DNA of 45,171 nucleotides from Vitrella brassicaformis CCMP3155 (GCA_001179505.1 CDMY01000600.1:1-45171); one strand, 5' to 3'. Numbered from the stretch's first letter, positions 20,182 to 45,171 are shown. A program made the numbers and translations. Notes: generated by a model from the sequence alone, not told the origin.

Positions 20182-23100
20182 TCACACACGCGTGAACTTC
20201 AACTGCATGTGCTTCATGTTGTAGTCATTGTAATCGCGCGTCGTGAGGTCGATGTGGCCAACGTCGAACCGCCCGCCCATCTTGCCCGCGATGGCATCAC
20301 TGCTCTCCAGCAGCTCAAACAGACGTTCTCCTAAGAAAGCTCCGGAGTCCTTCAGGAACTCCAACGTGAGGTTGTGGATACCGCGCAGCTCCAGCAGAGA
20401 CACCACACACTCGTAGAGCCGCCCAGCCGTCACAGACACATCAGGACGAACACCACGCGGGTCTGCAGACACACAACATTCATTCTTGCTGCACATCTCC
20501 GCTGTCACTACGCTGTCACTCACCAATGTCGTCGTCATCCTTTCCTTCTGCCACACACACACACACACACACACACGGAGAAAGAGAGAGAGAGAGAGAG
20601 AGAGGTCTCAGCCTCTTCCTTCAGCGTCCCATGTCGCCCTCTCTCACCGAGTGTGATGAGCAAATCCTCGATGATGGGCAAGCTTGCACGTTCCTGCCCC
20701 CACATGAGAAAGGATGACTCCGTCTGCTCTGTCGTCGATGGCTGCACATGGACGGTCGTCACCGTCTTGTCGGGCCCGATCGCCTTGAGCATGCCGAGGG
20801 CGCTGTTGTGGCCGGTGCGGCAGGTCGCCTGCAGCCTGGCGGGATCCTCATCGGAAGCCTTGAATGCCAGCGCCGCTCCCACCGCCGCCCCGACGGGACA
20901 CTCGACCAGCACCATAGCGGGGCTGAGTCAGCAGGGAAATGGACACAGATTCATTGAGCTTGGTGCCGTCCATTCATTCGTGTGTTCACCTGGTTGGACG
21001 TCTTTCCTCTACCCCGGGGGGCAGCCCAAAGAAGCACCTTCTGAGAGGCAGAGGGCGGCGGTCCAGCCGGGGCGGTGCGCGGGGGCCGAATGGGGAGGGG
21101 CACTTCTTGGTGATGTCGATGAGCTTGGCAAGAGTGGATGTGGGGGCCGGTGTGTCGGGCTGGTCGGCGAGGTTCGGACCTATGATGTAGACCGTCTCTG
21201 CCTTGTCGAAGGTGAGCGATGCTGCCAGGGCGGCGATGCCAGTGCTGGGTGGCGTGTCGGGGTTGTCGATGTGGTCCTGGGTGATGACCCACGTCAGGTA
21301 GGGCACTTTGTTGACGACGTCCCGCACCCATCCTGCCATGTCTGCCGGGGGCGTGTCCGGCAGCTGATGGAGGGAGGCAAGGTCGAAGCAATTGCATGGG
21401 AAGTCCTCGAGGGACGAGTTGGTGGGATGGTAGTGGAACACGATCTCCATGCTGGGTTTGCCTACAGCTGCCTTGAAGGCGTGCAGGTCTTGCAGGAAGT
21501 CGACGAAGCGGAAGGCATGGCGTGAGTCCGCAGCTGGCCGGTCGAAGAGCACCGTGAGAGACTCCAACTGCTGCCGGCAGCCAAGTGACATCAGCGTCTC
21601 CTGCACACGACAAAAGGCATTCATCGACACCACATGCATGCCATTTGTGATTCTCTTTTTTGCGCACCTGCAGTTCCTTCAGATGGCTCCGGCGATAGCC
21701 GCGTCCGATCCTGAGCGGTCCGAGTCTCTCCAAGCGAGCCAGAGAACCCGGCTGGCAGTACTTGAAGACATCACGCCAGTCGGAGGGCCACAGCAGTGGT
21801 GGCCCAAATGTGGGGACGACGAACATGTAAGTAACGCACTCCAGACACTTGAGGCAGTGGGATCCACTGATCAGCTCGCCCAAATCCAATGTCGCGACGA
21901 CATGCTTCCTATCGGCCATGTCATCCACCAGTTCCCGCACTGGAATGCCTGTCACGCACCGCACCTCTTGAAGCGCCGGCGCCTGCCATTTCCTGGCCAG
22001 ATGGAAGAAGTAGGGCGGCGCTGCTGTGATGGTCGTGAGATGGGGCAGGCGGGTGCCGCGGCCGAATTGGAATATCTTGAAGGAGGGCTCCACAGGGCAG
22101 CTGGTCTTGAGGTGGATGGTGGTGAGTGTGCCGTTGCCCCTTGTGGCGTGCCCCTCCGCAATGTCGGCGACCAGGCCAGACCACCCCAGCCCCCCCTGCC
22201 AGTCGTCCAGCGGATGGTCATCATCGCGTCCATGGAAGACGTGCTTGTTGTCGTATCCAGCGGTGATGTGGGTCAAGTTGGCGAGCCTGCCGCCCCATGC
22301 CCTGGCATCCTCACGGCTCATCGACAGCCAGAAGTAGACCTCCTGGTGGTTGAGTCCATCGACGCTCAGTGTGCTGTGCTGGTCGTAGTAGGGGAAGACT
22401 GTCGGCTGGACGGATGGGGGGAGCAGACGAATGAAGTAGGGCGGCAGGAACGAGACAACCTCTCCAACCATCCCCGGCCTCCGGAACAAGAAGAAACATC
22501 CATGTTGGTTCCTTGTGTGCTGTGTGTGTGTGTGTGTTCTTTCTTTCTTTCTTTCTTTCTTTCTTCTGCCCGCTTGGCTGACCTTCCCAAAGAGCAACTT
22601 CACAATCTTCTTGATATCGTCAGCCGTGCCTGATGAGCGAGCATCAATAACCGACACACGTGTAACTCCATACTGCCTGGCTTGGTGAGATCCTGACCAG
22701 GAATGCCTCGACGGTCGGCCTCTCGAGCGCTACAGCCCCGGTCGAAGATGGGCAGTTGGTATCCTCTAGCTGAAATAATCGGCAGGGATGGACACAAGGG
22801 CATGCGCTGGTCCATTTCTCGTGTTTGTGTGTCGCCATACGCTGCCAGTCGAAGGGGATGGCGTCTCGCGGGATGTGGGCGTATTTGCCTGTGGACGTGC
22901 CGGCCTCCAGGGCAGCGAGTGCAGCAATGTCGTCGAATCCAACGTACTGACATCCACGCAGACGCCCGTGTCGGCTTGGTATGGCAGTGAGTGTCTTGAT
23001 GCCCTTATCACAATTCGTACCGCGATGATGCATGCGATGCGAGCGCAGGCCAGCTGAATGAGAGGGCGACAGTCGACAAACTCAGCCGCCTGCATCCCAC

Positions 23101-23635
23101 CACACCCACAGCACCAATGGGCACCGGCGGTATGTGTGGGGGGTTTGTCATATCGTACCAGAGTCAGCGAACAGAGACCGTCCACGGTTAGGCGTTCGAT
23201 GAACTTGGCGTCCCAGTCATCAGCAACAACCTGCACTCACACACGCACGACATCCTGCCGATGCACGTCGGCCCTCTCCCTCCCTCACTGACTGACTGTC
23301 AACTCTCACCTCCGTCAGTTCATCTGTTTGGATTGGCTTGCTGATGTCGGCAGCCTGGCCCTTGTGATGCTCCGCATATTCGATGATCTGCTCGAGCTGG
23401 GCGCTGTCGACGGCCGGCAGCGGGATGGGATCACTGCTCCCGCCTGAAGCAGAAGAAATGACATGCATTGTTACAGATCATCGGCCCGTGTGCCCTGATC
23501 CCATTGCCTCTCTGTCGTACTAGCGGCTGTCTGTGGCGCCGATTGAATGAAGCCGCACATCTTGGCGCCGCCCTCGCTCATCTCGTGCAGACGGCCGTCA
23601 TTTGACTGCACAACGACGCTACCCACGGACTCCAT
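20182..23635 (-). CDS. SKP1-like domain joined to a lineage-specific F-box-like/LRR-like body; multi-exon
   Basis: Exons 23635-23521, 23443-23310, 23230-23159 and 23089-23021 encode VVVQSNDGRLHEM..DPIPLPAVDSAQLEQIIEYAEHH..DWDAKFI..SLTLAAEFVDCRPLIQLACARIACII, the SKP1 signature. Phase-compatible exons 22946-22841, 22769-22674 and 22629-22583 lead into ORF 20951-22657 (GEVVSFLPP..FWLSMSREDARAWGGRLANL..VADIAEGH). Further exons end at TGA 20182-20184. Confidence 0.7.
20553..20602 (+). repeat. Compound (CA)n-(GA)n intronic microsatellite
   Basis: cacacacaca..ggagaaagagagagagag. It reads (CT)n(GT)n before a minus-strand acceptor. Similar compound arrays occur at 29073-29122, 42887-42952 and 43855-43887. 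Confidence 0.9.
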
Positions 23636-23670
23636 GATTACGCCAATGCTGAGGAGATGCTGAAAGCAGT

Positions 23671-23688
23671 TGCATGCAAAAGCTCGCA
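23671..23688 (+). promoter_or_regulatory. TGCATGCA plus AGCTCGCA in the divergent SKP1-like / F-box-like gap
   Basis: tgcatgca 23671-23678 and agctcgca 23681-23688, between ATGs 23635 (minus) and 23839 (plus). TGCATGCA is a known apicomplexan ApiAP2-type motif. Confidence 0.5.
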
Positions 23689-23838
23689 AAAGAAATGGAG
23701 AAGGGGAGTCCTTAGCAGGAGCCGAGGGGGGAAGGACAAGGAGGGCGTCAAAATCGCTGGAGGATGATCCGCTGTTCATGCTTCTTTCAGCGGCGGAGGA
23801 TAGGTTAGGACGGCCGTGGCACCGCAAGTGGCACCGCG

Positions 23839-25176
23839 ATGGAAGCAGCAGGTGAAATGCACACAAACGGAGGGAAGGAGGAAGGCGTGCGGGCGTCTTT
23901 CATCCCAATGACTGTCTTATCCGTGTGGCAGGTGCGTGTGGTGGCAATGCTGGCGGTGGATCATCAGCGACTCGTCTGCCCGGCAGTGCCTCTGATGCTG
24001 CGAACCAGCAGGTCAGCGTCAGCCTTCACCAGTGGCATTTCGTTGCAGCGAAGTTGTGGTGGTGTGTTTGGTGCAGTCTGTGCGTCCTATGTGCTGTTGC
24101 AGGAAGGTGATTGCCATGTGCGGACTGAGTGAGTCGTGACGATGTCTGATTCGGTGCCCGACGACCTGTGGCGCAGGCGCATTCTGACGTCCCTTCTCGT
24201 CCATGAGACGGTCTGTGTCCGAGCGACCTGCCGGGCAAAAGCTGCTGTGGTGACCGCTGCTCTGCTGGTGGAGCGCATCGACGCCTCCCTCGCCCGCCAC
24301 TCACTCACCGGCCTCATCGACATCGACCGCACCGCCCCTCTCCCATTCACGTACGCGCTGCGGGCGGCCTATGTGCTGGAGCAGGACAGCAACGAGTGGC
24401 GTGGGATGGGACCGCTCATCCGGCTGGTCGCCATCTATCGGCTGACGCCTGCCAATGGGCTGCCCCTGGTGCTGTCGGCTCAGTGGCTGACAGCCCGCCT
24501 CCCCAGCAGGACGGCATTCCACCAGCTGCCATTGGCGATGGCGATCTATCGGCTGTTCGGCCACCTGCTCACAGACGTAGGGACCAGCCTGGCGCTGCAG
24601 CAAGCCGACGATAACGGGGCCTATCGGATCGGCAGTCAGTCGTTTCGTGTGGTGCCGTTGGGTGAGCTGCCGGCCGGCCATCCCTATGCTGAGGGCTACA
24701 AGCGGACCGACCCCGTCGTCCGATTCGGCCCCCTCTATCGCTCATTCTCGGCATTCCTGTTGTACGGGGTGCTCCGCTTGTGGCGCCATCAAGAGGGGGT
24801 GGGTCATAAGATGGTGCTGTAGGCCGACATCGGCCGCGGCGACCCTCGTTATGGCCGTCTGCTGACCGACGCCGTCACAGAGGATTCGGGCATCGCTGTC
24901 GACTCTCGCAATGACGGGTTCGATCTAAATGATGCTGCTGCGATTGACTATCGTCATGTGATAGTCAGCGGCTTCAGACCTGGTGAGACCGTGGCTGCCC
25001 ACATGTACGTATGGTTGGGCTCCATCCAGCTGTACACGACCGAGATATCAACTGCTGCTGGTCGGCCTGCATCACTCTCCGACCGCTACTCCGTATCGGT
25101 TGGTGCCGCCCGCCGTGTGCTGCGAGGATTCGGTCTCGAGAGTGACGTCGTCGACAGGGGGAGGGTGCTGGGGTGA
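23839..25176 (+). pseudogene. F-box-like lineage-specific family gene with shared leader exons and two in-frame stops
   Basis: Exons 23839-23851 (MEAAG), 23932-24011 and 24103-25176. F-box-like segment SVPDDLWRRRILTSLLVHETVCVRATCR. In-frame TGA at 24130-24132 and TAG at 24820-24822; the frame continues (ADIGRGDPRYGRLL..) into ORF 24958-25176. Confidence 0.7.
23908..24050 (+). repeat. Shared leader exon 2 with flanking intron sequence (copy 1; others at 28332-28480 and 26191-26310)
   Basis: ggtggatcatcagcgactc..tctgcccggcagtg..tgatgctgcgaaccagcaggtcagcgtcagccttcaccag is near-identical at 28382-28460, and diverged at 26240-26310. Confidence 0.9.
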
Positions 25177-25582
25177 GGGGTGACGGCTTGATAGGTGGTC
25201 CGGTATGTTGACCGAGCAGAGTCGCATATTAGTGGCGGTGCAAGGCTGACTACATTTGAAAGCGTTGCGTGCCTGTTTGCAAGTATGGCATCAATCGATG
25301 AATGTCCCACTCGTTGCTATCGGACTCTTTGACTGGATGGCGTGTTCACCTGAATGAATGGATTCATGCCAATCACCGTCGACTCGTCATGAGAAGCCAC
25401 CGTGGATGAAACCTGAGTGTGTGTGCGGATGAGGAAGGCCTGTGTGTGAGCATGAGTGTGTGTGTTTGTGGTGGAAAGCTCATGCTCACAAAGGGATCGG
25501 TTTGTGTCTTGAGCTTCAAGACTTGACGCGCTCCTTGCGAGCTTGGCTTTGCGATGACTGGGCCGACAGGGCGAAGGTCCGG

Positions 25583-25810
25583 GAGGCCTCTGAGCCTCCC
25601 GCGCAGCAAAACGGGCCCCGAGAGCCTCCTTGCAATGCGATCGAGTGAGGATCGAATCGCTGATTTTCTCCGAAGTGGCAAATTCGTTTTCCGATTTTAT
25701 CGGCTCAATGCCTTGTCTGTACCGCCACACACATGCCAATGGCTCAACGGCGCCGAACAAAGCCAAAAAAGGCACAAAAGGATTCGGATTTTGAGCTTGC
25801 AAGCTCGCAG
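25583..25810 (+). repeat. Dispersed non-coding upstream cassette, copy A
   Basis: gatcgagtgaggatcgaa..gattttct..agtggcaaattcgtttt..gattttatcggct, then gaacaaagccaaaaaag and caagctcgca. Collinear with the reverse complement of 41990-42215. Confidence 0.8.
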
Positions 25811-26136
25811 ATTTTCCGGTCCTGCGACCTTTTTTAGCGCATTCTCCGGTCTCCTGGGCGTCGTGTGATCAGAGTCTGCCATTCTCGTGGCGCTTGGTTG
25901 TCATTTTGCAGTCCGTCTGGTGCCGGGGTCATCGCGGGGGAGAAAGGACTCATCTCAGGTGGGCGGACGTCGCCAATGGGATGAAGCGACACTGTCAGAT
26001 GCAGACGACAGTCAGCAGGCACATCCTGCCGTCTGGGTTTCCTGCAGGTCACCGCCTTTGACCACGGAGGTGTTGGGCGAAGGAGGACCATCCGGTGAAG
26101 GGTAGCCAAGAGCAATTGGATAGAGGGAGCGCCACG

Positions 26137-27617
26137 ATGCAAGCAGGTGAAACAAGAAAGACCGACTGAGCAGGCACTGTTCTCATCACGGTGATTTTCT
26201 TGTGTGTGCCGCAGGCGAGTCGGCGTCTGCGATCGGTGGTGGTGGAGGTTCATCTGCAGCGGATCAGACCTGCAGTGACGCTGACGGGCACAATCAGCAG
26301 GTCAGACTTAGCCATCACAGCTTCGCACACCACCGAGGCGCCACTTGCAGCAGACGCCCAGACCAGCAACATCCGTTTGTTTCGGAATATGACTCTGCAG
26401 GTGGCCTCAGAGAGCGTCGAGCGAGAGAACCAAGGGGAGAGAGATGGTCATGGTGAAGGTGATAGTGCGGCGGCTGCGGCTGATGGTGGTGGTGGGGAGG
26501 CCACCGCACAAGCAGATCCCAACGCAGAAGTCTCATCAGGTACAATGGACTAAGCATTGTGACGTACATCCATCTGGAGGTGTGTCTACACGTGGGTGCA
26601 GAGTGGTTGAGGGAGGGTCCCCCGGAGGAGCCCGGGCAGTGCGGCCAGGCCATGCGCCGTGAGCCGATGACGATTCAGCAGTTCCACAAGTGTGTGCTGG
26701 AGAGCCTCTTCACACAGACGCGGCACCGAATCCAGGTAAGTATACGCACAACACCGGATCCATCCATGTGCAGAGAGCACTCAGCTCCTTGTGTGCGGGT
26801 TGGCTGCAGTGGCGGGTCAAGCAAGGGGACGGCAGGCTGGTGCGGGAGATGGAGGGCATCGATCGATCAGGGCAACTCGATGTTCAAGTTGGCTGTCCAT
26901 CAGTGGTGAGTCCGTCACACAGGGCCACAGAACCACTGCAATGCGCGTTGTTTTGATTTGTCCTGTGTGCAGGATGACCTGCTGTCACTACGGCGGGTGC
27001 GCATGGACGGTCATCGTCCAGCACACAGACACAGCCGGCTACACGCACCAGAGCGTAAGGCGACAAACACACCATCGCCAACACACACTACTGCGTGAAT
27101 CTTATGTGTGTGTGTATGTGTTGAGTGCAGGAGTTTTCGCTGCCAGTGCCCAGCAGTGTGACCGCTGACCTGATGGAAGCCGCCGTGAAGGATCTGCAGA
27201 CCCTCGTAGACGTCGTCGTGTGCAAGACGTAAGCCGCCCGGCCTCACCGCACAGACGGTCCCACACGCACATCGTAACACGGTAACGTGTGTGCAGCTTC
27301 ATTCGCGAGAAGATCGCCGGCCGCAACCCTCCCAGACAAACGCAGCAGAGGGGCCGCGAGAAGGGCCAGAATGAGAAGGTGCCCCACTCCCCTCAGATGT
27401 ACTTCATCGCACACAAAGCCTCCGGACGATTCTCTGCATTAGTGAGGGTGGACGGCGGGAAAGAATAACTGGGGGGGGTGTCTGTCGCGAGTGAGCCTCT
27501 GTGCTTGTGTCCTGGTGTTGGTGTGTGCAGGCGCGTCTTCTGGAGCTGTGCAGCACGCACCGCCCACACAGGGACGAGCCGCTACACAAGAAACGCAAAA
27601 CTCAGAACACCGCATGA
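26137..27617 (+). CDS. Orphan multi-exon gene with shared leader exons; one junction is out of phase (possible pseudogene)
   Basis: Exons about 26137-26146, 26215-26300, 26401-26539, 26601-26735, 26810-26905, 26973-27054, 27131-27228, 27298-27441 and 27531-27617. High-GC3 coding segments include MTIQQFHKCVLESLF, MTCCHYGGCAWTVIVQH and VTADLMEAAVKDLQTLVD. The donor at 26906 is phase 0 but the acceptor at 26973 needs phase 2. Confidence 0.5.
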
Positions 27618-27634
27618 GTGGCCGGCCATGGGTG

Positions 27635-27636
<2 letters not shown>

Positions 27637-27676
<40 letters not shown>
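27637..27676 (+). repeat. (GACA)n microsatellite
   Basis: About 10 perfect GACA units just downstream of the 27617 stop. Shorter GACA/CTGT runs occur at 40839-40856, 42462-42481 and 44651-44689. Confidence 0.95.
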
Positions 27677-27678
<2 letters not shown>

Positions 27679-27896
27679 TGGGCATGCAGTGGGCAGACCG
27701 ACACAGCGACACTTTTCGAATGCAATGTACGCACAAGAGTGAACGAGTTGGTCTGACATCTGTGGACATCGATTCATTGTCTTTCATATTCGACTGTCCG
27801 GGCCGACCAAAGTGGACGCCTGGACGCCCTGAGGGGCGCTCGCCCAGCCAACGTCGCCAAACGAACGCGAAAGCTCCCGATCGTGTGGCATTTTCA

Positions 27897-27904
27897 AGCT
27901 CGCA
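27897..27904 (+). promoter_or_regulatory. AGCTCGCA upstream motif
   Basis: In the context tttcaagctcgca, shared with 41993-42005 (reverse strand); upstream of the gene starting at 28271. Confidence 0.5.
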
Positions 27905-28270
27905 GCCCGTCCGTTCCTTCCCTTTCTCGCGACGTGCCGCGGCGTAGGGCTGATCCGTCTCGTATAGCTCCCCTGTGCATTGCGGTGACGTTTGGTTGTC
28001 ATTTCGCGAGGGCAGCTGCATTTCGGTGTGACGTGTGCTGCTGGAGTCATCGCCGGGGAGGCAGAACTCATCGCAGGTGGGATGAAGCGACGGCATGGGA
28101 TGCAGAGAAGCTCCCTCCGTTTGTTTGTGGCCGTACAGAGCACGTCGAGTCCCAAACACTGGCGTCGATGAAGGGATGACTGCCTTTGACGCCGAAGGAT
28201 GTCCACAGTGACTGACCGGTGTTGTGCGTGAAGCGCTCATCGTCGGAAGATAGAACAAACAAACACCACG

Positions 28271-29073
28271 ATGGAAGCAGGTGACGTGACACACACAAAC
28301 ACAAGGCAGCGAGCGGGAGGCGTCATCAACAGTGATTGTTCTCCGTGTGGCAGGTGAGTGTGACGCTGGTGGCAATGGTGGCGGTGGATCATCAGCGACT
28401 CATCTGCCCGGCAGTGTCACTGATGCTGCGAACCAGCAGGTCAGCGTCAGCCTTCACCAGCGGCATTTCGTTGCATCGACGTGTGTGAGGCTTCTGTGTG
28501 ATGCAGGCTGCCAGTTACAGTGACGTTCTCCATCGCATGCGCGAGCAGCTTGAGCTCATGCGAGACATCACCAGCACACTACACACTCAGGTATGCAGCC
28601 CTGGTCGCTTCCACAGGTCCCTGCCTCGTCTGTTGGCTGTCTTTCGTGTCAGTGCGTCGATCTGTCGGCGACACGAGAGGATGTGTCTGGGCGACTGGCT
28701 GAGCGGTTGATGCGCATTGAGTCGGACATTGCCCACATGAAACAGATGATCGAGAGCTCACAGGTGCGCATGTCGATGGATGCGGGATGTGAGTGCATTT
28801 TTGTGAGCTCGCGTGGTGTGCCTTTAGGTTCGTGTTGGCGAGGCGGTGGGTGTATCTCACTCGGTACTTGAAGAGGAAAGGGGAGAGAGACCGTCATTGA
28901 CGGCGGGCAATATCTTCCATGTGTGAGTGCAGCTACCTGCAGCCGTGAAGGAGGATGATTCCCCTGCTCCTGCGGCTGTTAGTGCTAGCAGTAGCACTGC
29001 TGCTGCTCGTGCCGGTAGTACGCAGCGACACAAGGATGAAACAGCGACCCGCCACATGCGCCAAGAGCCCCCC

Positions 29074-29120
<47 letters not shown>

Positions 29121-32100
29121 TGCAGGTGGTGTGTCAGAGGACTTTGAGCAAGGAGAGAGCAAAGGCCAGCAATAGCTGCAGGAGGTCAGTACATGCATAC
29201 ACCGACAGACATCGCACTCGGGACTCATTTCTCTCACTCCCCTGTGTCCGTCTGTGTGTCGGTCTGTGTGTGTGTGTTTGTGTGTGCCTGTCAGGGTGTC
29301 GGCCCGCGGTGTGTGGGCGTCCTGACGGCTGAGCCGCTGTGCGAGCGGACGATGTCATGCCCCTTCCTCGCCACCAAGAAGGCCTCTGTGCCGCCTCGCG
29401 AGATCGGGAAGGGGCCGGAGGACACGACGGGTGCCACTCACCGCAACATGCCCATCGCACCCCGTTCTCTCGACCAGGGCGCCAGCCACAGCAGAGGCCG
29501 CTCGTCATCCCTGCCGCCTCGAGTGGTGTCCCCGTCGCTGCATGATGATGCCTCACCATCTGGCCAGCGCAGCTCCGGAGGACAGGTGAAGCACGCCCAA
29601 CCCAATAGCAGCCCCTTGGTGGCAGCATGCAGTGTCCAATTCTTTCTCCCCCGGTCAAACAGGTTCGCATAGAGGATATCGAGGTTCTGCACCAGCTGCT
29701 TGTGCAGGTGGGGCGATGGATGGGAGGCAGCACCAACCAGACACACCACCGACACCGTGCATGGGTGTTGCTCATTCCCTCCTTTTGTGTGCTCCGTGCC
29801 TTCAGAACCACGCGATAGCTTGTATGGACGCCTCTCAGCTGCCCAACCAGGTCAGTCGGCGTCCCACAGCCACGGTGGTCGTCTACAAGTCAGGCTGCGG
29901 TGGATGTGTGAGTTATATGTGTGTTGATGCAGAGTCCCATGACGCTGCAGGACCACGCGTCGGTGAGAAGAGCCCTGCAGGCAGCGAAGGACGCCCTGTG
30001 GATGGGCTTCGGGAGCCTCCAGAACATCAGATACCAGGCAGGCACCTTGGCACGCACAACGACACACAGCGGCAGCACCGGCCATGTCGCAAAAGGCTCT
30101 GTTCTGTATGTGGTTTGCAGCACGACCCACAGCTGGAGGGCAACTTGTTCCATCTGCACAAGAGGGGCAGCATGTCAACTCGCAACGACGGACCGGTACA
30201 CAACAACTAACACACAGAGGAAAACATCGGCGTCGCGCCGCACTCCGTACCTGTCTGTCTGTATGTCGATCGATCACCAGGCGCAACTTCTGTTGACCCC
30301 TTTGGATCATGCCAACATCAGCAGCTTCTTCAGCCCCCGTGACCTCGGCCATCGCCTTCTCAGCAAAGGCGCCTTCTCACTCTCGTACGGCTGCTGCGAC
30401 CGCTTCGCCGTCGACTACGCCAAGTCGGCCACGAGGGCCATGTGGGAGCGGATGCCTACCGATGTGGCCCGCAACATGGGGCGCGGACTGGTCAACCTCA
30501 AGACGCTGGTGGTGCGCTACCCCGTTGACGCTCCGTCGTGGTGCTGCGAGGTCACTTACAATCCCCTGTGGTGCTCCCACGTGTGGGTGTCCATTGTCGA
30601 GGGCCACGTGGAGGGCCGGGAGGCAATGAAGAAGGAGAAGCGGCAGCGAGAGGCCAGCAGCAGGGGCGCTCCCACAGCCACAACCAATCAGCAAGCGTCC
30701 TTCCACGGCAAGGCCGACAAGGGGTCGCTCCACACCATCGTCTTCGAGGCGGTCCCCTTGTCAGAGTGCGACAGGGCAACTTCTGTCTCGAATGAATATT
30801 CGAGGCTGACGATACGTTTGTTGAATGAATATTCTTGGCCTCCACCCGCTTCTAGCTCCTCTAGTCGCACCCCCCGCCGCCGTTCCCTGCCACCGCCCAC
30901 CCCCATCACCCTCCCTGCGCTGACCACCATCACCGGCCTCCGCCCAGGTCAGGCCAACATCATCAGCGACAGAAGGTGGCGCACACCGGCACTCGAGCGG
31001 GCGCAGGGCTCCACCACCCAGCTCCCTCCCAATCCTCGCCCCTGGGACCGTGCTTCTCTGTCCTTCATCGGCACATCCAAGCGCCTCAAGCACATCGACA
31101 TGGAGACGAAAATGGGTGTGATGGTGGAGGTGCTGTCGAGGGTGTCGCCGCCGGCTGACGGGCAGCCAGGGGGGCTCGCCGCACTCGAGACCATCGCCAC
31201 GCTCGAGCTCGAGATCGGCCTCAGCAAGTCGGAGGCTGCTGTAGACAAACTTCGGGTAAGAAGGGATCACAACGGACGGGAAATGATGCCCGACACGCAA
31301 ATATCATCGGCGAATCTTTATGGCGTGTTTTCCTTCCCTTAGGGTCTGCTGGTGCGCCACAAGTGCCGATCGATCCGCTCTATCTTGATCTTGATCAATA
31401 TCGAGAAGAACGCTGTCGATTCCCGTGAGCTCTTCGCCTTCCTGTCGGCAGTCGATCGCCTGCAGGAAGCACTCGGCACCCACACAGACATCTCCATCCT
31501 CACGCCATACCTGCGAGATAGAGGGCTGCGCGTCGGTTTCCACCTCCCCGCCATAGTGCCTGCCACCTCCTACCGTCTCTTCACCTTCACATTCAACATG
31601 ATCGCCGGCCAGGCCGCGACCGTCGAGTGGCGTGTCGACGCATCTCGTCAGGAGGAGCTTCGCAGCCCCCCTCAGGCCGAGACAGACCTCTTCCACACTC
31701 TGCGCTTCCCCTCGGCCAAAAAGGTGGACGTCTCGGTCGACAATCTGGGGGCCCTCGCCAGCCGCCCGCTGCCCACCCTCTCCGCTCTCGCTGCTCTCCC
31801 AGCTGACGCATTCCCCGCAGCCTCAAAGCTTGCGATTGTGGACGGTCGGCTGTGTGAGCCCGGTGGTGTGCTGGCACAGAAAATGCCCAAGATCGCGAGC
31901 GTGACGGTCGGCCCATCAAATTCATCGGGTGCGGTGATGGCCGCCGACCTTCTGGGGCTGCTCCGACGGGCCGGGGGTGGCAAGACGCTACGTGTGGACA
32001 TCGGTGGAGTATTGGGCGGATTGGGTGGGGCCGGTGTAAGGTGGGATGAGGACTAGCTGCCGGAGGTCTCGTCACTGAAGTTCGAAATGATCGGTGGGTG

Positions 32101-32466
32101 GGAAGCAACACTGGAGGGAGGGAGGGAGGGAGGACAGACAATGCTGCACACATGGTGGTGGTGCATGTGTGTCTATGTGCAGTACCTCATGGTGATGTGG
32201 GTGTGGAGGTGATGTCGTGCGTCGAGCCACTGCTCCAGCTGCGGGGCATGCAGGAGCTGACGGTTTTCCCGCGGTTTCGGGAGGGTGCTGATAGAGAGGC
32301 CGTGCGAAGGGCGATTGAGGAGGAGTGCCGCAGACGGTTCCCTCCTGGCGGCACGCACGGCCTCGGCATCACCTTTGCGGGCCCCTCGTGGAGAGGTGGT
32401 TTCATCTTCAGGGTCCGCCGGCACGGCGCCCAGAAGGTCAGACATCATGCGCCGTCAGCATCCTGA
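28271..32466 (+). pseudogene. Mosaic gene of about 14 exons (leader + coiled segment + shared three-exon block + F-box/LRR-like body) with two in-frame TAG codons
   Basis: Phase-consistent chain from ATG 28271 (MEAG) through exons at 28354, about 28507, about 28652, 28933, 29126, 29295, about 29661, about 29806, about 29933, 30121, 30281, 31343 and 32183 to TGA 32464-32466. TAG 29173-29175 aligns with CAG in the paralog (44760-44762). TAG 32054-32056 precedes a homologous last exon (SCVEPLLQLRGMQEL versus ECVVSLLELRGIHNL in the 20182 gene). Confidence 0.65.
28933..29650 (+). repeat. Three-exon/three-intron block duplicated in inverted orientation at about 44310-44972
   Basis: Exon pairs GGVSEDFEQGESKGQQ*LQE versus GGVSGDLGQGGESKGQQQLQE, and EPLCERTMSCPF..SHSRGRSS..HDDASPSGQ versus EPLCEWTTSCPF..SHSRGRSS..HDDTSPSGQ. 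The introns are also alignable. Confidence 0.9.
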
Positions 32467-32900
32467 TGGTCATACATGGCCAACAGGGATGGTTGATGCA
32501 CGGTGGTGATGTGACGTCATCGACAGAGGGACGGTGGTGATGTGGGGGTGAGGGACAGGTTGGTGTGTTTGTAGTGGGAGGGGGGCTGACTGTGTTGGTC
32601 GGGCGAAGTGGCTGAAAGCATTCTTTCACGAAATGGACCTATCGACGCACACATTACTCGTGTGACTGGCTGCGGAGGTCCGTAGCAGCCCCTCTTGCAC
32701 GCTAAGTGACGCCAATCGCGCTTTTGCTCTTGAGTCTGTTGATCTACATCCATGTGCTGACAGACGGTCTGCCATGGACTGTTACTTGCTTCGTCTTATC
32801 AAGATGTCTGTCTTGTCACGCAGCACGACAACAATGCAGAATCACGGCACATCACACTATCCAGCGCTCTAACCGACAACAACATCTACACTTCTCACGC

Positions 32901-35900
32901 TCATTCCATCATGGGACTCGCCGAGGCACTTGCACTGCCCGGCTGCCCCTGACCCAGCCGCCTCACCGCACCTGTCAGCGTCTGCAGGAACCCCCCGCCC
33001 AGCTGCTGTGAGGTCGGCGGTCTCCTCAGCGCCGCCTCAGCCTCCTCATTCAGACCCAGCTGTGAGAACCACTTAGCCTGGGCCTCTGGGTCACGCAGGC
33101 GGGGGATGAGCTTCACAGCCGCATCGACGGCACGCACGCGGACACAGGCGGCAATGAAGGGGTCATAGCCGATGGGCGAGGTGCGCAGCTGGGCGAAGGT
33201 CAGCAGCTCGTCGATGTTGCCGCTGAAGGAAGACACCACACAGGAGATGTGTGCAATCCTTGTTGGTATCGTATCGCCGAGCACATACCTGTCGGCGAGT
33301 GCGTCGATCTTGACCCTCCAGTATCGCTTGTCTGGCACCTTGAAGTGCTGACGCAGATGGTCGGCCTCAGTCATCTCACCCCTGCGTAGACAAACAACAC
33401 AGCATGATGAATACTGTGTGTGTGTCTTTGGCATGTCGGTTGCATCACCTGAGTATGAGTTGCCTGAGCGTGGCCACCAGGGGCAGCCCCACGAACCGGG
33501 GCGGCCCTCCCCTCCACCCCTGTGTGTGTGCCTTGAGCTCCAGGTCGCGCTGCTGCCCCAGCAGGTCCAGCTGGTCCATCGTCGCCTCAAAGGCAAACTT
33601 GGACGCATGCTCACTCGGACCTGCACACATACGCGCACAGACAGAAGACGCATCACGCGTCGATTGTTGGGTCTCTGTTGTTGACGAGCCCACCTTTGGC
33701 TGACGAGTGTGTGGCTGGGTTGAAGAACTGTGCGGCGAGGGTGAGCCACGGCTTGCGCTGCTCCCAGTCGGCCTTCTGCAGGGCCAGGGTGAGGCTCACC
33801 ACACCGCCCTGCATGTAGCTGCCGCGCTTGTCGTAGTAACGCTGCAGCTGAACACATACGACAACAACGGGAGGTTTGTGTTTGCACGAAGGTTGCCCCT
33901 GTCGTGTGTTGTGTGTTTTGTACCTCTTCCCATTTCTGCGTCCGCTTGCACATGGCGACAAAGAGGTCGGCAGCCGCTGGCCGGTCCTTGATGGCCTCCA
34001 GCAAAGCGCCAAGACCACTGTCCATACTGACAAACAGAGACGCGGGGACACATTTACATGGCGCCGTGTCGCTCTCGCGTTTCTTTTTTGTTCCCTACGC
34101 GTCATCTCTGCGCCGTGTTGTCGACCCAGGTGCCTGTGCTGCGGTGTGTGTGAGCGGTGGGTGTGTGGGAATAGGTGTGGGTCTCATCCATCCGCTGGTC
34201 AGGGCCGCCAGACACTCGAGGATCAGGTCGGGGTCGCCACTCGCCACCGCCTTGTCAGTCGCGAGCCGCGTCTCGGCCAGCTTCAGCAACATGCGCACCT
34301 GAGCCTGATGGACAGATGGAGATAGACAGGTTGCCGTCTGTATGTGGGTCTTCCGGTTCTTGTCTCACTTGGCTCTTGATTTCATGCTCGAGCAGCATAC
34401 ATGCCAGGTTTGGACGGGCTGCATTTGCGGCCACACTCGCCACCTGTGAGCAACGGACAGGCAGGCAGACAATGTCTGTGTGTTTGAAACGAGAAACGAT
34501 CTCTGCTGACCGCCGAGTACGAGATGTTGGGGCATCCGTGGAAGCGCCTGACGATTTCCTTACACAGCTGGTCGTCCGTCAGCTCCAGAGTGTGCCGGAT
34601 CTTCTCGGTCGCCCAGTGCAGCAACACCTTGGACGCCGGCAGACCGACGTACTCACACAGACGATACGCCAACAGGTGATAACGCCGCCTGCACACACAG
34701 AAACATAGCACGCTTTGCTGCGTCTGCCAGCGCTGTTTTCTGCTCACTTGGCGAGTCTGTCGATGAGGTTGGCGATTCCGAGTTTCTGCAGCTGTGCCAC
34801 TGTGATGGGTATCTCGTATGGCGGTCCCCTGACGGCCAGACACACCCTGATGTTGCGGCACGCCTCGACAAAGGGCACTGGGTCGGGGGGGGTGTCCAGG
34901 AAATGACGACCGAACACCGCCGCCCTGATGACACGCACCACCGGCAACAAGGGATCTAAAAAGTGAATCAAGATCTAGATACGTCACGTGGTTGCGCACC
35001 TAAGCAGCTGTCTGATCTGTTCAGGGTTTGGTTCATGTGCTGCGGCCTCAATGCACGCGGTGGTCGCCTCGCCGAGTTCCTCCTTGATGGCCCTAAGGGA
35101 CTCGTCTGCGGCCACGTCGCCGGCCTCGTACTTCTCCAGAGCATACGTCAACATGGCCGGCGCCTCGCAGCTCCCAATGCTGAACAGGTCATGCACACAC
35201 AGGCATAGAAAGGAGCACCGTGTCTGTGGGTGGACTGCCTCGTACGTGTCATCCTTGCCTGAATATGGCTTCCGTGGAAGGGTGCACTCGGTGGAGCATC
35301 TCGCTCTTGTCGGCTGTGAGGATGCGGACGCCGTCGAGTTCGCTGACGAGGCACACAGACGTGTCGTAGGCATAAGGCAGCCAGTCGTTCTTGGGACCAC
35401 CCAGGAACACCATGTGCTGACAGAAAGAGCCACCAGTGCATTGCCTGCACCGACCATTGCGGGTGCATCGTGTGTTCCGGTGTACTTGTGAGCCGCCCGA
35501 GGGTGTGGGTGTGACGAGGTGGAGGGCTATACAGTCGTCGCCGCACCACACCTGACACACAGACAGCAAACGGGGCTGGCTGTTGATCTTCTGGAGCGTT
35601 CATTCTCTGTTACCCTACCATTTGTTTGGGCTTCTTGCGCACATCCAGAGTGGCGACGTCCAGCGGCCTCGTCAAGTTGTGCGACGACAACACCTTGAAG
35701 ATGCTGACACACATACGCAACACACACCCGTATCCTCCCCCTCCAGCTGCGTTGTCATTGTCTGGTGCTGCTCCTGACCCTGTCCTCGATAGACAAGCCA
35801 CCAGTCGGTGGCTCCGAGAGACGGCCAGCGCGCAGAAAGGACCATCCTCCAACCTAACAATATATACAAGGAGACCCCACAGGTGATACATGCCGAGCAA

Positions 35901-41989: not shown

Positions 41990-42215
41990 TTTTGCGAGCT
42001 TGAAATTGCGGGCCGTTCGGCTTTTTTCGCTTCGTTCGCGAGTTTTCTCGAGGGATGTGTGTGTGCCATTGCACAGAGGACCCCCTCAGCCGATAAAATC
42101 AGAAAACGAATTTGCCACTGTTGAGAAAATCAGCCGTTCGATCCTCACTCGATCGGCTTCTGCGGCCGCTGCCGAGGGCCTGTTGGGCTGCCCGGGGGGC
42201 TGGGCGGCCTCTTGA
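41990..42215 (-). repeat. Dispersed non-coding upstream cassette, copy B
   Basis: Reverse complement matches 25583-25810 in the same block order and the same orientation relative to the downstream gene. Confidence 0.8.
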
Positions 42216-42951: not shown

Positions 42952-45171
42952 AGAGACGCCATCCGTCCATCCATGGCCACCATGTGTGTGTGTCCCTCCC
43001 TCCCTGTCCACACCGTCATCATCGTAGCTGTTATCGTCTACTTGGCCGTCGAAGACGTATGGCGCCACCCGCCTCAACGCCACACGGGCCAGCTGAGTGG
43101 TCAAGAGGAAGCGGTCCTTAAAGGCACCCCTCACACGCACGGGCGCCTCGGTCGTCAGAACACTGACGCACACTGCAGACAGTCACACACAGACAGCACT
43201 GGTGATATGTGACCACCAGAGCTGCCTTCCTGTCATACTTACCGATGCCGTTGCCACAACCCTTCACGTTCATCCACGCGACGAAGTTGTGGCTGCTGTT
43301 GGTCAGCACCAGATCCCGTATGTCACCGTCACAGCTCATTGTGGTGGTGCACCCGGCCACGGGTGTGTGGGGCGACTGGGTGAGGAGGCCATCCAGACGG
43401 CCGCCACCAACACGCCTGAACCAACCAGACACACAAACACAAACACAGACGCACCCCTTTTGCAACTGGTGCCATTGATGTGGTACCTGTTGGGCGATAT
43501 GAATGTGCTATTGGTCTGGTGAGTCCCGTTGAAGTGGACGATGACCATGCTCTTGGCGAACGACGATAGCGACGCATCGGTGGTCGGGAGGATCGACAAC
43601 TATCTGCCCGAGTAGAAGATCTCGCTGTGCACTGGCGGGTCGTGCTCCAGTCGGTGCCGCTCATACAGATGGCCGGCACCGGGGAGGGGCGGGTTGACAT
43701 CCAGCCGGAAGCCGGGCGTGTCCTTGATGGCCCGCACCTCACCATTCCCATGGCGGAAGATCTGGAGGCGGCTGCTCTTGCCGAAGTCCACGTGGCGGCC
43801 GACCATCATGAACTGCGCCAACACACGAGCTACCGATCCATACGCCTACACGACACCACACAGACAGAGAGAGAGAGAGAGAGAGAGGAATGACTGAGGC
43901 CTCCCTGTTCTCCCGCCCCTGTGTGTGTGCGTGCCTTACCGCCTTGTTGGCGTGTGTGTTGATGTCATCTGTCGTGAGGTTGAGGGGCAGCGTGCAGTAG
44001 CGGCACTGGCTGGCCCACTGCAGCACCTCTCGCATCTCTTCCCACCGCCCGCCCTCCTCGGCTATCCACACCGCCGCCATGAGCTCACCCATCCCCAGAG
44101 ATGGGTCGAACTGCACCAGCTGCAGATGCTGAGTGTTGATGCCATCTCCGTCACGGCTCAGTGAGTTGGCGAGGCGGGTGCGCAGCTCAGCTATGGTGAA
44201 GGCAGCCCGGATGCGCCGCGATGTGGCCCTCAGGCGGGCAACCGTGACGATGTCGGGCAGATGGCCTCGGCTGCCAACGAACAAGTAGCTGACGGGATGC
44301 TCCTGGGCGGACAGAAAGATATGGACTGCATGGCGCCAGCAAGGGGTTCCTGTTGGGTTGGGTTTGCCTCACCTGTCCATCAGACGTGTGCTGGCCAGAG
44401 GGTGATGTGTCATCATGCGGCGACCGGGACACCACTCGAGGCGACACGAAAGACGACCGGCCTCTGCTGTGGCTGCCGCTCTTGTTGAGAGCACGTGGCG
44501 CGATGATCTTGTTGTGGTGGTTGCCCTCTGTCATCTCCGCCGGCCCCTTCTCGACCTCGCGAGGCAGCACTGAGGTCATCTTAGTGGTGAAGAAGGGGCA
44601 TGACGTCGTCCACTCGCACAGCGGCTCACTCGTCAGACCGCCGACACCCTGACAGACAGACAGACAGACAGACAGACACACAGACAGACAAGGGGAGTGA
44701 GAGCAATGAATCCCGAGAGCCATGTCTGTCAGTGCATTTCACACACTGACCTCCTGAAGCTGTTGCTGGCCTTTGCTCTCTCCTCCTTGCCCAAGGTCCC
44801 CCGACACACCACCTGCACACACACACACAGACGGCTCTTGGTGCATCTTATGGGTCGCCGTGTCATCCCTCTGTCGTCTCATACCCCGGCCACCAGCAGC
44901 AGACACAGCACTAGCAGTAGCGGCAAGGAAAGAGGGCACCGAGGAGCCATCCGCCCTCACAGCAGCATGGGCCTGCACACACACATGTGCATCAGATTGC
45001 CCGGCGCCACTGATGCTCTCTCTCCTCTTCGAGAACCTACCGAGTGAGGTGCGTCAGATGTGTCGCTTGCCTCTCCTTCTACGCCACTCGCCTCGCCAGC
45101 ACCGACCTGAGGGCACACCACACCACACGAAGCCATGCAAGTGCACCCACATCCCGCACATATGTCGACGT
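42698..45171 (-). pseudogene. Mosaic F-box-like family gene, 5' end outside the window, with an in-frame TAG
   Basis: Exons 45106-45041, 44972-44885, about 44812-44751, 44648-44373, 44302-43940, 43845-about 43488 and further exons to TGA 42698-42700. TAG 43600-43602 separates abutting same-frame ORFs 43600-43824 and 43336-43599. Acidic C-terminal tail. Confidence 0.65.

What the first reader, a model, noticed from the sequence alone, without database searches (positions are those of the whole stretch)
23839..28480. Portable two-exon leader (MEAG + Gly/Ser exon ending NQQ) spliced onto three unrelated gene bodies
Genes starting at 23839, 26137 and 28271 share a 10-13 nt first exon (ATG GAA/CAA GCA G|gtga), a phase-1 intron and an 80-86 nt exon (GGGGSSA..DA.NQQ|gtcag). 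Homology stops inside intron 2 (about 24050 and 28480), after which the bodies are unrelated: an F-box-like long exon, an orphan Cys/His protein and a coiled segment. Upstream DNA is also shared (about 25890-26000 versus 27985-28105). This looks like a mobile promoter-plus-leader module that ends in phase 0 and can activate any downstream phase-0 exon set.
Basis: partly seen in the sequence, partly recalled or inferred. Interest (0 to 1): 0.75.

Follow-up and report, generated by a model that had tools for sequence, protein, structure and literature searches.

The report
Shared 5' leader from gene shuffling
Three neighbouring genes of the alga Vitrella brassicaformis really do begin with the same two tiny exons, but this comes from partial duplication and recombination inside introns in a fast-rearranging cluster of orphan genes, not from a mobile element, and in one of the three genes the leader is not fused to the protein behind it.

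Summary
A two-exon leader sits at 23839, 26137 and 28271: ATG plus 10-13 nt, a phase-1 intron, then a 74-86 nt Gly/Ser exon ending in phase 0. The genome (Vitrella brassicaformis CCMP3155) holds nine copies, not many.

The leader is the native 5' end of a small family, which I call C-type. Five full loci carry it, and MMETSP transcripts show leader exon 2 spliced to C-type exon 3. Gene C (873 aa) is a normal member.

Gene B (272 aa, an orphan) carries an older copy of the C-type upstream DNA plus leader. The copy is 62-80% identical and joined in frame. Homology stops about 20 nt into intron 2.

Locus A is a remnant. Exon 2 and all of C-type intron 2 abut the 5'-UTR acceptor of an intronless ORF cassette that has at least 45 copies genome-wide. 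The leader frame hits TGA after 9 codons, the cassette has its own ATG, and the public model omits the leader.

On contig C782 a full C-type gene precedes the same cassette, and transcripts splice into that acceptor. A deletion derivative is therefore the likeliest origin of A.

I found no terminal inverted repeats and no high copy number. The bodies are unrelated by BLAST and profile tests. This is ordinary exon shuffling by partial duplication.

The scan has no earlier report of this on other DNA.

The parts
23417..23824 (+). Upstream region of locus A, patchily homologous (77-83%) to the upstream region of the C-type copy at C791:231053
   Evidence: A -422..-15 vs C791b -445..-6.
23839..23851 (+). 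Leader A exon 1 (ATGGAAGCAGCAG|GT, 13 nt)
23932..24011 (+). Leader A exon 2 (80 nt, ends in phase 0). It is 92-94% identical to exon 2 of C, whereas exon 1 plus intron 1 is closer to the C791b/c and C782 subfamily.
24012..24102 (+). Chimeric 91-nt intron. 24012-24074 is the whole C-type intron 2 (80% to C) including its acceptor. About 24065/24075-24102 is the 3' end of the A-type 5'-UTR intron with its conserved acceptor.
24103..24132 (+). Nine codons read in the leader frame, then TGA (24130-24132). The leader would therefore give a 40-aa peptide or upstream ORF, not a fusion protein.
   Evidence: sequence; ORF 23839..24132.
24142..24822 (+). A-type ORF with its own ATG (226 aa), cut short by TAG at 24820. 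Intact relatives are 341-344 aa.
24075..25176 (+). A-type cassette, one member of a Vitrella-only family with at least 45 genomic copies (148 candidates)
25881..26006 (+). Upstream block of gene B shared with the upstream of gene C (74-80%)
   Evidence: z = 20.
26137..26146 (+). Leader B exon 1 (ATGCAAGCAG|GT)
26215..26300 (+). Leader B exon 2 (86 nt, ends in phase 0)
   Evidence: P0067.
26401..27617 (+). Body of gene B (exon 3 is 26401-26539; stop 27615-27617). It is an orphan. The only other copy is a frameshifted fragment of exons 4-7 on C782.
27979..28109 (+). Upstream block of gene C shared with gene B
28271..28280 (+). Leader C exon 1
28354..28439 (+). Leader C exon 2 (86 nt)
   Evidence: P0063.
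28507..32056 (+). Body of gene C (exon 3 is 28507-28590, exon 4 is 28653-28763, and so on; 873-aa public model CEM25408.1)
44313..45171 (-). Truncated further C-type copy that runs off the contig end, so its leader would lie beyond the window

Best explanation
The leader is the native 5' module of a small Vitrella-specific gene family, here called C-type. The module has four parts: a conserved motif 20-45 nt before the ATG, a 10-13 nt first coding exon, a 68-94 nt phase-1 intron, and a 74-86 nt Gly/Ser-rich exon ending in phase 0.

The three window genes share it because this cluster rearranges by partial duplication, gene conversion and deletion, with breakpoints inside introns.
- Gene C is an ordinary family member.
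- Gene B arose when an older copy of about 0.45 kb of C-type 5' DNA (upstream DNA to about 20 nt into intron 2) came to lie in front of an unrelated, orphan exon set in the same phase.
- Locus A is the 5' stump of a C-type gene. Its exons 3 to last are gone, so the exon-2 donor now faces the 5'-UTR splice acceptor of an A-type ORF cassette. If spliced, the leader forms only a 40-aa upstream ORF.

Shown: the homology maps, the frames, the copy numbers, and transcript use of both the splice of leader exon 2 to exon 3 and the A-type acceptor.

Inferred: the order of events, the deletion at A, splicing at A and B in this strain, and the idea that TG-rich intron 3' ends supply microhomology for the junctions.
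For: Copy number and the leader's home:
- A whole-genome BLAST and a sequence-only model find 7 strong and 2 distant copies.
- The copies at C791:217057, C791:262415, C791:231053, C782:19444 and window 28271 share exons 3 onward.
- MMETSP transcript ORFs P0066 and P0069 read leader, then exon 3, then exon 4.

Coding status of the leader:
- The frame is kept in 8 of 9 copies.
- Exon 2 is more conserved than its flanking introns: 77-79% against 47-58%.

Locus A:
- A-type homology starts at 24065-24106 in five other copies, and all of them keep an acceptor about 40 nt before the ATG.
- On C782 a full C-type gene is followed about 65 nt later by an A-type unit.
- The transcript ORFs end in TLVVHRRWPCAD*. 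Joining the C-type last donor to the A-type upstream acceptor on C782 reproduces that ending exactly.
- The A leader is itself mosaic. Exon 1 plus intron 1 is nearer to the C791/C782 subfamily, while exon 2 plus intron 2 is 80-94% identical to C.
- The upstream flank of A matches the flank of the C791b copy.

Gene B:
- The upstream block is shared with C (z = 20).
- Only aa 1-37 of the proteins are alike.
- No homologue turns up among candidates 150-476 aa long in 5.8 billion proteins.

Wider mosaicism:
- P0063 and P0068 share only aa 3-251 / 4-333.
- A block of gene-B exons 4-7 recurs on C782.
Against: - No RNA data from strain CCMP3155 were available, so splicing of the leader at A and B rests on gene prediction and on analogy with C782.
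- The window's A-type unit is closer to copies on C240 (85-88%) than to the C782 unit (78%). A simple shared-ancestry deletion model therefore needs later gene conversion, or else A formed by a different junction event.
- The two distant leader copies (C375, C311) precede yet another body with no detectable similarity to A, B or C. That means at least three in-frame contexts, which is more reuse than a single accident would give.
- The transcripts come from MMETSP. The Vitrella sample known from the literature is a different strain, CCMP3346 (PMC8464036).
Confidence: 0.72

Rival explanations
1. Mobile promoter-plus-leader module. A transposable or Helitron-like element carries the promoter and two exons around the genome and activates whatever phase-0 exons lie downstream.
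For: The module (upstream motif, exon 1, intron 1, exon 2, donor) is found in front of at least three unrelated in-frame bodies: B, C-type and the C375/C311 type. It always ends in phase 0.
Against: - Only 9 copies exist in 72.7 Mb, on 5 contigs.
- Six of the seven strong copies are paralogues or remnants of one gene family that shares far more than the leader.
- Homology fades gradually upstream, and its extent differs between pairs.
- No terminal inverted repeats flank the modules.
- The 3' limits differ: the end of intron 2 in A, about 20 nt into intron 2 in B.
- Helitron termini could not be tested properly because the edges are not sharp.
Confidence: 0.05
2. One ancient gene family. All the bodies are homologous but have diverged beyond recognition, while selection kept the N-terminal leader.
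For: All the proteins are Vitrella-only orphans without Pfam domains, so fast divergence is plausible. Exon 2 is under constraint. The C375/C311 genes have a phase-0 exon 3 of 81 nt, against 84 nt in the C-type.
Against: - A/C identity falls from 80-94% to nothing at 24075, and non-coding intron DNA is conserved right up to the break.
- The A body has at least 45 relatives, and none of those examined has the leader directly before it.
- B and C share non-coding upstream DNA at 74-80% but nothing in their downstream exons.
- HMM and hhalign tests between the bodies are negative.
Confidence: 0.1
3. Locus A is an assembly artefact. A full C-type gene was collapsed, joining its exon 2 to the A-type cassette that really lies further downstream, as on C782.
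For: - The region is rich in paralogous repeats, and the contig ends inside another C-type copy.
- Transcripts carry aa 1-23 of leader A on a full C-type body.
Against: - The junction lies in sequence that is not identical between the putative parents. There is only TG-rich microhomology of about 10-15 nt, and no N run.
- The transcript tail (RRWPCAD*) matches the C782 cassette, not the window's cassette, which would read differently.
- The transcripts probably come from another strain (PMC8464036).
Confidence: 0.07

Closest known systems
Chimeric genes formed by partial (5') gene duplication or illegitimate recombination, as described for Drosophila (PMC1463047, PMC4069613; review PMC3449122)
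   Same: A promoter plus the first exons of a parent gene are duplicated and joined, through a breakpoint in non-coding DNA, to unrelated downstream exons. The parent gene remains nearby, and the junctions show at most microhomology.
   Different: Here the same small phase-0 module is seen in at least three in-frame contexts and one out-of-frame context within one genome. All partners are lineage-specific orphans. Expression of the B chimera is not shown.
Classical exon shuffling with phase-compatible introns
   Same: The breakpoints lie in introns. The leader ends in phase 0, and exon 3 of B, of the C-type and of the C375/C311 type all start in phase 0.
   Different: The shuffled unit is a 5' terminal module that includes upstream DNA and the start codon. 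It is not an internal symmetric domain exon, and it encodes a short Gly/Ser-rich peptide rather than a folded domain.
Conjoined (read-through) genes
   Same: On C782 and in MMETSP transcripts, the last donor of a C-type gene is spliced to the 5'-UTR acceptor of the next gene, the A-type cassette. The upstream ORF ends a few codons into that exon. Locus A has the same layout in shortened form.
   Different: In A nearly all of the upstream gene is missing, so what remains behaves at most as a donated promoter and upstream ORF.
Gene-fragment capture by Helitrons or Pack-MULEs
   Same: Fragments containing a promoter and exons are found next to unrelated sequence.
   Different: No element termini, no inverted repeats, a low copy number, and no transposase or RepHel nearby were seen in the stretches examined.

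Membership tests
Chimeric gene by partial duplication / intron-located recombination | The shared segment is homologous as DNA, non-coding parts included | tested here: met
   Intron 1, the start of intron 2 and the upstream DNA all align.
Chimeric gene by partial duplication / intron-located recombination | Homology ends abruptly in non-coding DNA, and the flanking bodies are unrelated | tested here: met
   The breaks lie at 24075 (A) and at about 26320 (B). tblastx, BLASTP and hhalign are all negative for the bodies.
Chimeric gene by partial duplication / intron-located recombination | An identifiable parent gene for the donated part | tested here: met
   The C-type family, with 5 full loci plus transcripts. 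The parent of the A body is the A-type family with at least 45 copies. No parent was found for the B body.
Chimeric gene by partial duplication / intron-located recombination | The chimeric transcript is made and the reading frame is continuous | tested here: inconclusive
   The frame is continuous in B and C and closed in A by TGA at 24130. Transcript proof exists only for C-type genes. No RNA data exist for A or B.
Transposable element / Helitron capture | Many dispersed copies with constant ends | tested here: not met
   Nine copies, with variable extents.
Transposable element / Helitron capture | Terminal inverted repeats, target-site duplications, or a 5'-TC...hairpin-CTRR-3' signature | tested here: inconclusive
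   No flanking inverted repeats were found. Helitron ends could not be judged because the module edges are diffuse.
Spliced-leader trans-splicing | A leader exon encoded by separate SL RNA genes and added to many mRNAs | tested here: not met
   Each leader lies in cis, 67-119 nt of intron before the next exon on the same strand. There are only 9 copies, and the leader has its own ATG and an internal intron.
F-box proteins (the label given to the A body) | A match to an F-box profile | tested here: not met
   No Pfam F-box hit at E <= 0.1-1 for the window ORF, for P0006 or for P0068. The resemblance is by eye only.

The most novel reading that the evidence does not exclude
The leader module may act as a seed for gene birth. 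Each stray copy supplies a promoter, a start codon and a phase-0 splice donor, and this recruits downstream DNA as new exons. Gene B has no homologue among candidates 150-476 aa long in 5.8 billion proteins. It would then be a young gene made this way, and the C375/C311 genes an older case. On this reading the cluster is a local hot spot of gene origination in a chromerid.
Probability: 0.2. Interest if true: 0.6.

Novelty: new member of a known kind. Interest (0 to 1): 0.33.

Why it matters
This is a clean, dated-in-layers example of how a short 5' module gets reused by intron-level rearrangement in an alveolate alga. The module consists of upstream DNA, a start codon, two mini-exons and a phase-0 donor.
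- The A/C layer is recent (80-94% identity).
- The B/C layer is older (62-80%).
- The C375/C311 layer is old (about 66%).

It also corrects the local annotation logic:
- Gene A is not a leader fusion and may be a decaying copy.
- The C782 model fuses two genes that transcripts show to be conjoined but separately terminated.

It has no functional consequence that can be named yet, because every protein involved is an orphan.

Tried and rejected
- Pfam on the A ORF, P0063, P0067, P0068, P0006 and two long ORF stretches of gene C (30218-31339, 31352-32053): nothing above threshold.
- Rfam on 22000-33000 at E <= 0.1: nothing, so the conserved start of intron 2 is not a known RNA.
- tblastx, BLASTP, a local HMM of C-type aa 33-100, and hhalign between the bodies: all negative. 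A by-eye resemblance between C-type exon 3 and the corresponding exon of P0070 and the C375 gene was therefore dropped.
- tblastn of an intact A-type protein against the other C-type loci: no A-type unit follows them, only the window and C782 copies. A universal 'C-type followed by A-type' arrangement is rejected.
- The search for homologous proteins with a long C375 ORF returned only a 56% paralogue without the leader (P0070), not the locus's own model.
- Literature searches for Vitrella plus exon shuffling or chimeric genes found nothing specific.
- I submitted no joined (spliced) model to any search. Exons were searched by reference, and I used the public protein models instead. The only joining was a local translation of 77 nt across the predicted C782 junction, to compare with the transcript C-terminus.
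Full report
**What the window is.** The assembly has 72.7 Mb in 1064 contigs, and the window is the whole 45,171-bp contig C600. Public proteins that match it exactly are named Vitrella brassicaformis CCMP3155. GC content is about 59%, and introns are short GT..AG introns that often end in TG-rich tracts.

The corrected leader coordinates are:

| Locus | Exon 1 | Exon 2 |
|---|---|---|
| A | 23839-23851 | 23932-24011 |
| B | 26137-26146 | 26215-26300 |
| C | 28271-28280 | 28354-28439 |

- A and C are 94% identical over 23939-24054 / 28367-28482, with genome-wide E = 6e-49.
- B is much more diverged. It is 68% identical over 82 nt and 62% over exon 2.
- The donor context CAGGTCAGNNTNAGCC occurs three times in the window, against 0.22 expected.
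- B and C also share upstream DNA about 150-250 nt before the ATG. The local alignment scores 39, against 11.0 +/- 1.4 in 300 shuffles.
- The upstream DNA of A is not like that of B or C (scores 12 and 11). Instead it matches the upstream of another family member on C791.

**How many leaders there are, and whose they are.** BLAST with the A leader finds four more copies: C791:217057, C791:262415, C791:231053 and C782:19444. A sequence-only covariance model of the seven copies was run over the genome. It scores those seven at 128-199 bits and two further loci (C375:80474, C311:28811) at 44-45 bits. Everything else scores 30 bits or less.

The two distant loci have the same anatomy: ATGGAAGAAG|GT, an 89-94 nt intron with the same branch-site-like CAACAGTGAC motif, and a Gly-rich 73-74 nt exon followed by |GTCAGCC (C375) or |GTCAACC (C311). 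Exon 1 plus exon 2 is a multiple of three in 8 of the 9 copies although the split varies. Exon 2 is better conserved than its introns in distant pairs, at 77-79% against 47-58%. The leader therefore behaves as coding sequence.

The four extra strong copies and gene C share exon 3, exon 4 and more. The leader is thus the normal 5' end of a small family, which I call C-type. A sixth, truncated C-type body lies at 44313-45171 on the minus strand and runs off the contig.

**Public models and transcripts.** I built a profile of the nine exon-2 peptides, each taken by reference, and searched it against 1.84 billion proteins. It found only Vitrella proteins plus one spurious repeat protein:
- P0063 (873 aa) is gene C.
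- P0067 (272 aa) is gene B. Both start with the leader in frame.
- P0064 is the C791:231053 gene.
- P0066 and P0069 are MMETSP transcript ORFs. They read leader, then exon 3, then exon 4 and onward, which is transcript evidence that the leader is spliced and translated in C-type genes.

The MMETSP Vitrella sample named in the literature is strain CCMP3346 (PMC8464036). That would explain why no genomic exon matches these ORFs at 100%.

**Gene A is not a leader fusion.**
- The ORF behind leader A (24142-24822) has its own ATG.
- It belongs to a Vitrella-only family with at least 45 genomic matches at 75-92% identity (148 candidates) and about 60 annotated proteins.
- Intact members are 341-344 aa and intronless. 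The window copy carries an in-frame TAG at 24820, which the public model P0001 bypasses with a 57-nt predicted intron. P0001 starts at MSDSVPDD, without the leader.
- In five other copies, homology to the window starts at 24065-24106. All copies keep a splice acceptor (TGTGCTGT..CAG|G) about 40 nt before the ATG, so the cassette normally has a 5'-UTR intron.
- In the window, A/C homology runs through the whole C-type intron 2, to its acceptor at 24074 (80% identity), and is gone from 24075. The interval 24012-24102 is therefore a chimeric 91-nt intron.
- Reading from either acceptor (24075 or 24103) meets a stop before 24142. In the leader frame, nine codons are followed by TGA at 24130.

**Where A came from.** On contig C782 a full C-type gene (leader plus body) is followed about 65 nt later by an A-type unit. 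The public model P0068 (675 aa) fuses the two through an acceptor inside the A-type ORF.

The transcript ORFs instead end in ...TLVVHRRWPCAD*. Joining the C-type last donor (GTGCACAG|GTCAGTGG) to the A-type upstream acceptor (TGTGGCAG|GCGG) on C782 reproduces exactly that ending. So the cassette's 5'-UTR acceptor really is used by an upstream C-type donor, and the upstream ORF stops seven codons into that exon.

Locus A has the same layout, with C-type exons 3 to last missing. Its flanks support this:
- The upstream DNA of A matches the upstream of the C791:231053 gene.
- A short element after the A-type unit (25583-25714) also occurs downstream of that gene, although that element is a dispersed repeat.

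The A leader is itself mosaic. Exon 1 plus intron 1 is closer to the C791/C782 subfamily (66-69% against 61%), while exon 2 and intron 2 are closest to C (92-94% and 80%). That points to gene conversion or recombination between paralogues.

The likeliest history is a C-type gene followed by a cassette, then conversion by neighbour C, then a deletion between two TG-rich intron 3' ends. This sequence of events is inferred. The caveat is that the window cassette is closer to the C240 copies than to the C782 cassette.

**Gene B.** The public model is in frame: leader, then exon 3 at 26401-26539, and onward. B and C share patches of upstream DNA and the leader, and homology stops about 20 nt into intron 2. 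At protein level only aa 1-37 align.

B has no homologue among candidates 150-476 aa long in 5.8 billion proteins and no Pfam domain. The only other genomic copy of its body is a block of exons 4-7 on C782 (window 26600-27253, 91% identical), which starts a few bases before the exon-4 acceptor and is frameshifted.

B is therefore best read as a chimera of an older partial 5' duplicate of a C-type gene with an unrelated exon set. Whether those exons came from an older gene or were newly recruited cannot be told.

**Are the bodies related?** Every test was negative:
- tblastx gives at most about 28 bits.
- BLASTP shows nothing beyond the leader.
- hhalign of a 24-member A-type profile gives 0.6% probability against C and 0.15% against B.
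- A local HMM of C-type aa 33-100 finds nothing in the C375/C311 loci or in P0070.

The C375 and C311 genes are 87% identical to each other over 4 kb and unlike anything in the window. A 56% paralogue of them (P0070) lacks the leader. The C-type family is mosaic at its 3' side as well, since P0063 and P0068 share only aa 3-251 / 4-333.

**Mobile element?** The evidence is against it. There are nine copies, the extents of homology vary, no inverted repeats flank the modules, and no RNA family matches. Spliced-leader trans-splicing is excluded by the cis arrangement and by the leader's own ATG and intron.

**Verdict.** The sequence observation is correct and more than chance. The leader is a re-used phase-0 5' module, in frame on B, on the C-type genes and on the C375/C311 genes. 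It is not mobile in the transposon sense, and it is not fused to the A body. The closest known kind is chimeric-gene formation by partial duplication and intron-located recombination (PMC1463047, PMC4069613, PMC3449122), together with conjoined-gene splicing.

**Limits.**
- I had no RNA data for this strain.
- I searched no joined spliced model. Exons were searched by reference and the public models were used. The only joining was the local 77-nt junction translation.

Noticed in passing
window 25583-25719 (core about 25639-25705); also window 42088-42211 (-): A short dispersed element with at least 35 copies on more than 25 contigs, in both orientations. It has no Rfam match. It could be a miniature repeat or a shared regulatory element.
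   Followed up: partly
window 24142-25176 and proteins P0002-P0057: The A-type family (about 60 annotated Vitrella-only proteins, no Pfam domain) carries at least three alternative N-terminal modules on one conserved C-terminal domain of about 260 aa. The modules begin MSDxVPDDLW.., MASSxP..WRGRVV.. and MQPTGAAPSS... The family is therefore modular too.
   Followed up: partly
window 24766-24822: The public model P0001 removes an in-frame TAG (24820) with a 57-nt predicted intron. Intact relatives read this stretch as coding, and the copy at C240:80710 stops at the same place. The window copy is probably a decaying gene.
   Followed up: partly
C782:10282-10919 (= window 26600-27253): A block of gene-B exons 4-7 is duplicated on another contig at 91% identity. 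It starts a few bases before the exon-4 acceptor, ends about 20 nt into the next intron, and has a frameshift in exon 4.
   Followed up: yes
C782:16917-19622 (public model P0068, CEM33475.1): The annotated 675-aa protein fuses a C-type gene with an A-type gene through an internal acceptor. MMETSP transcript ORFs instead use the upstream acceptor and terminate after 351 aa, so the fusion model is probably wrong, or at best one isoform.
   Followed up: yes
window 44313-45171 (-): A truncated C-type gene copy at the contig end. It is the best genomic match (92%) to aa 167-262 of the MMETSP transcripts. Its leader would lie beyond the assembly.
   Followed up: partly
window 22667-23532: An 87.5% inverted match to C782 (about 6834-7691 in that contig's own coordinates). 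It lies inside the neighbouring gene that another note describes as an SKP1-like fusion.
   Followed up: no
window 27637-27676: A (GACA)n microsatellite directly after the stop codon of gene B. A related (CAGG)n/(GACA)n tract precedes the gene-B-like block on C782.
   Followed up: no
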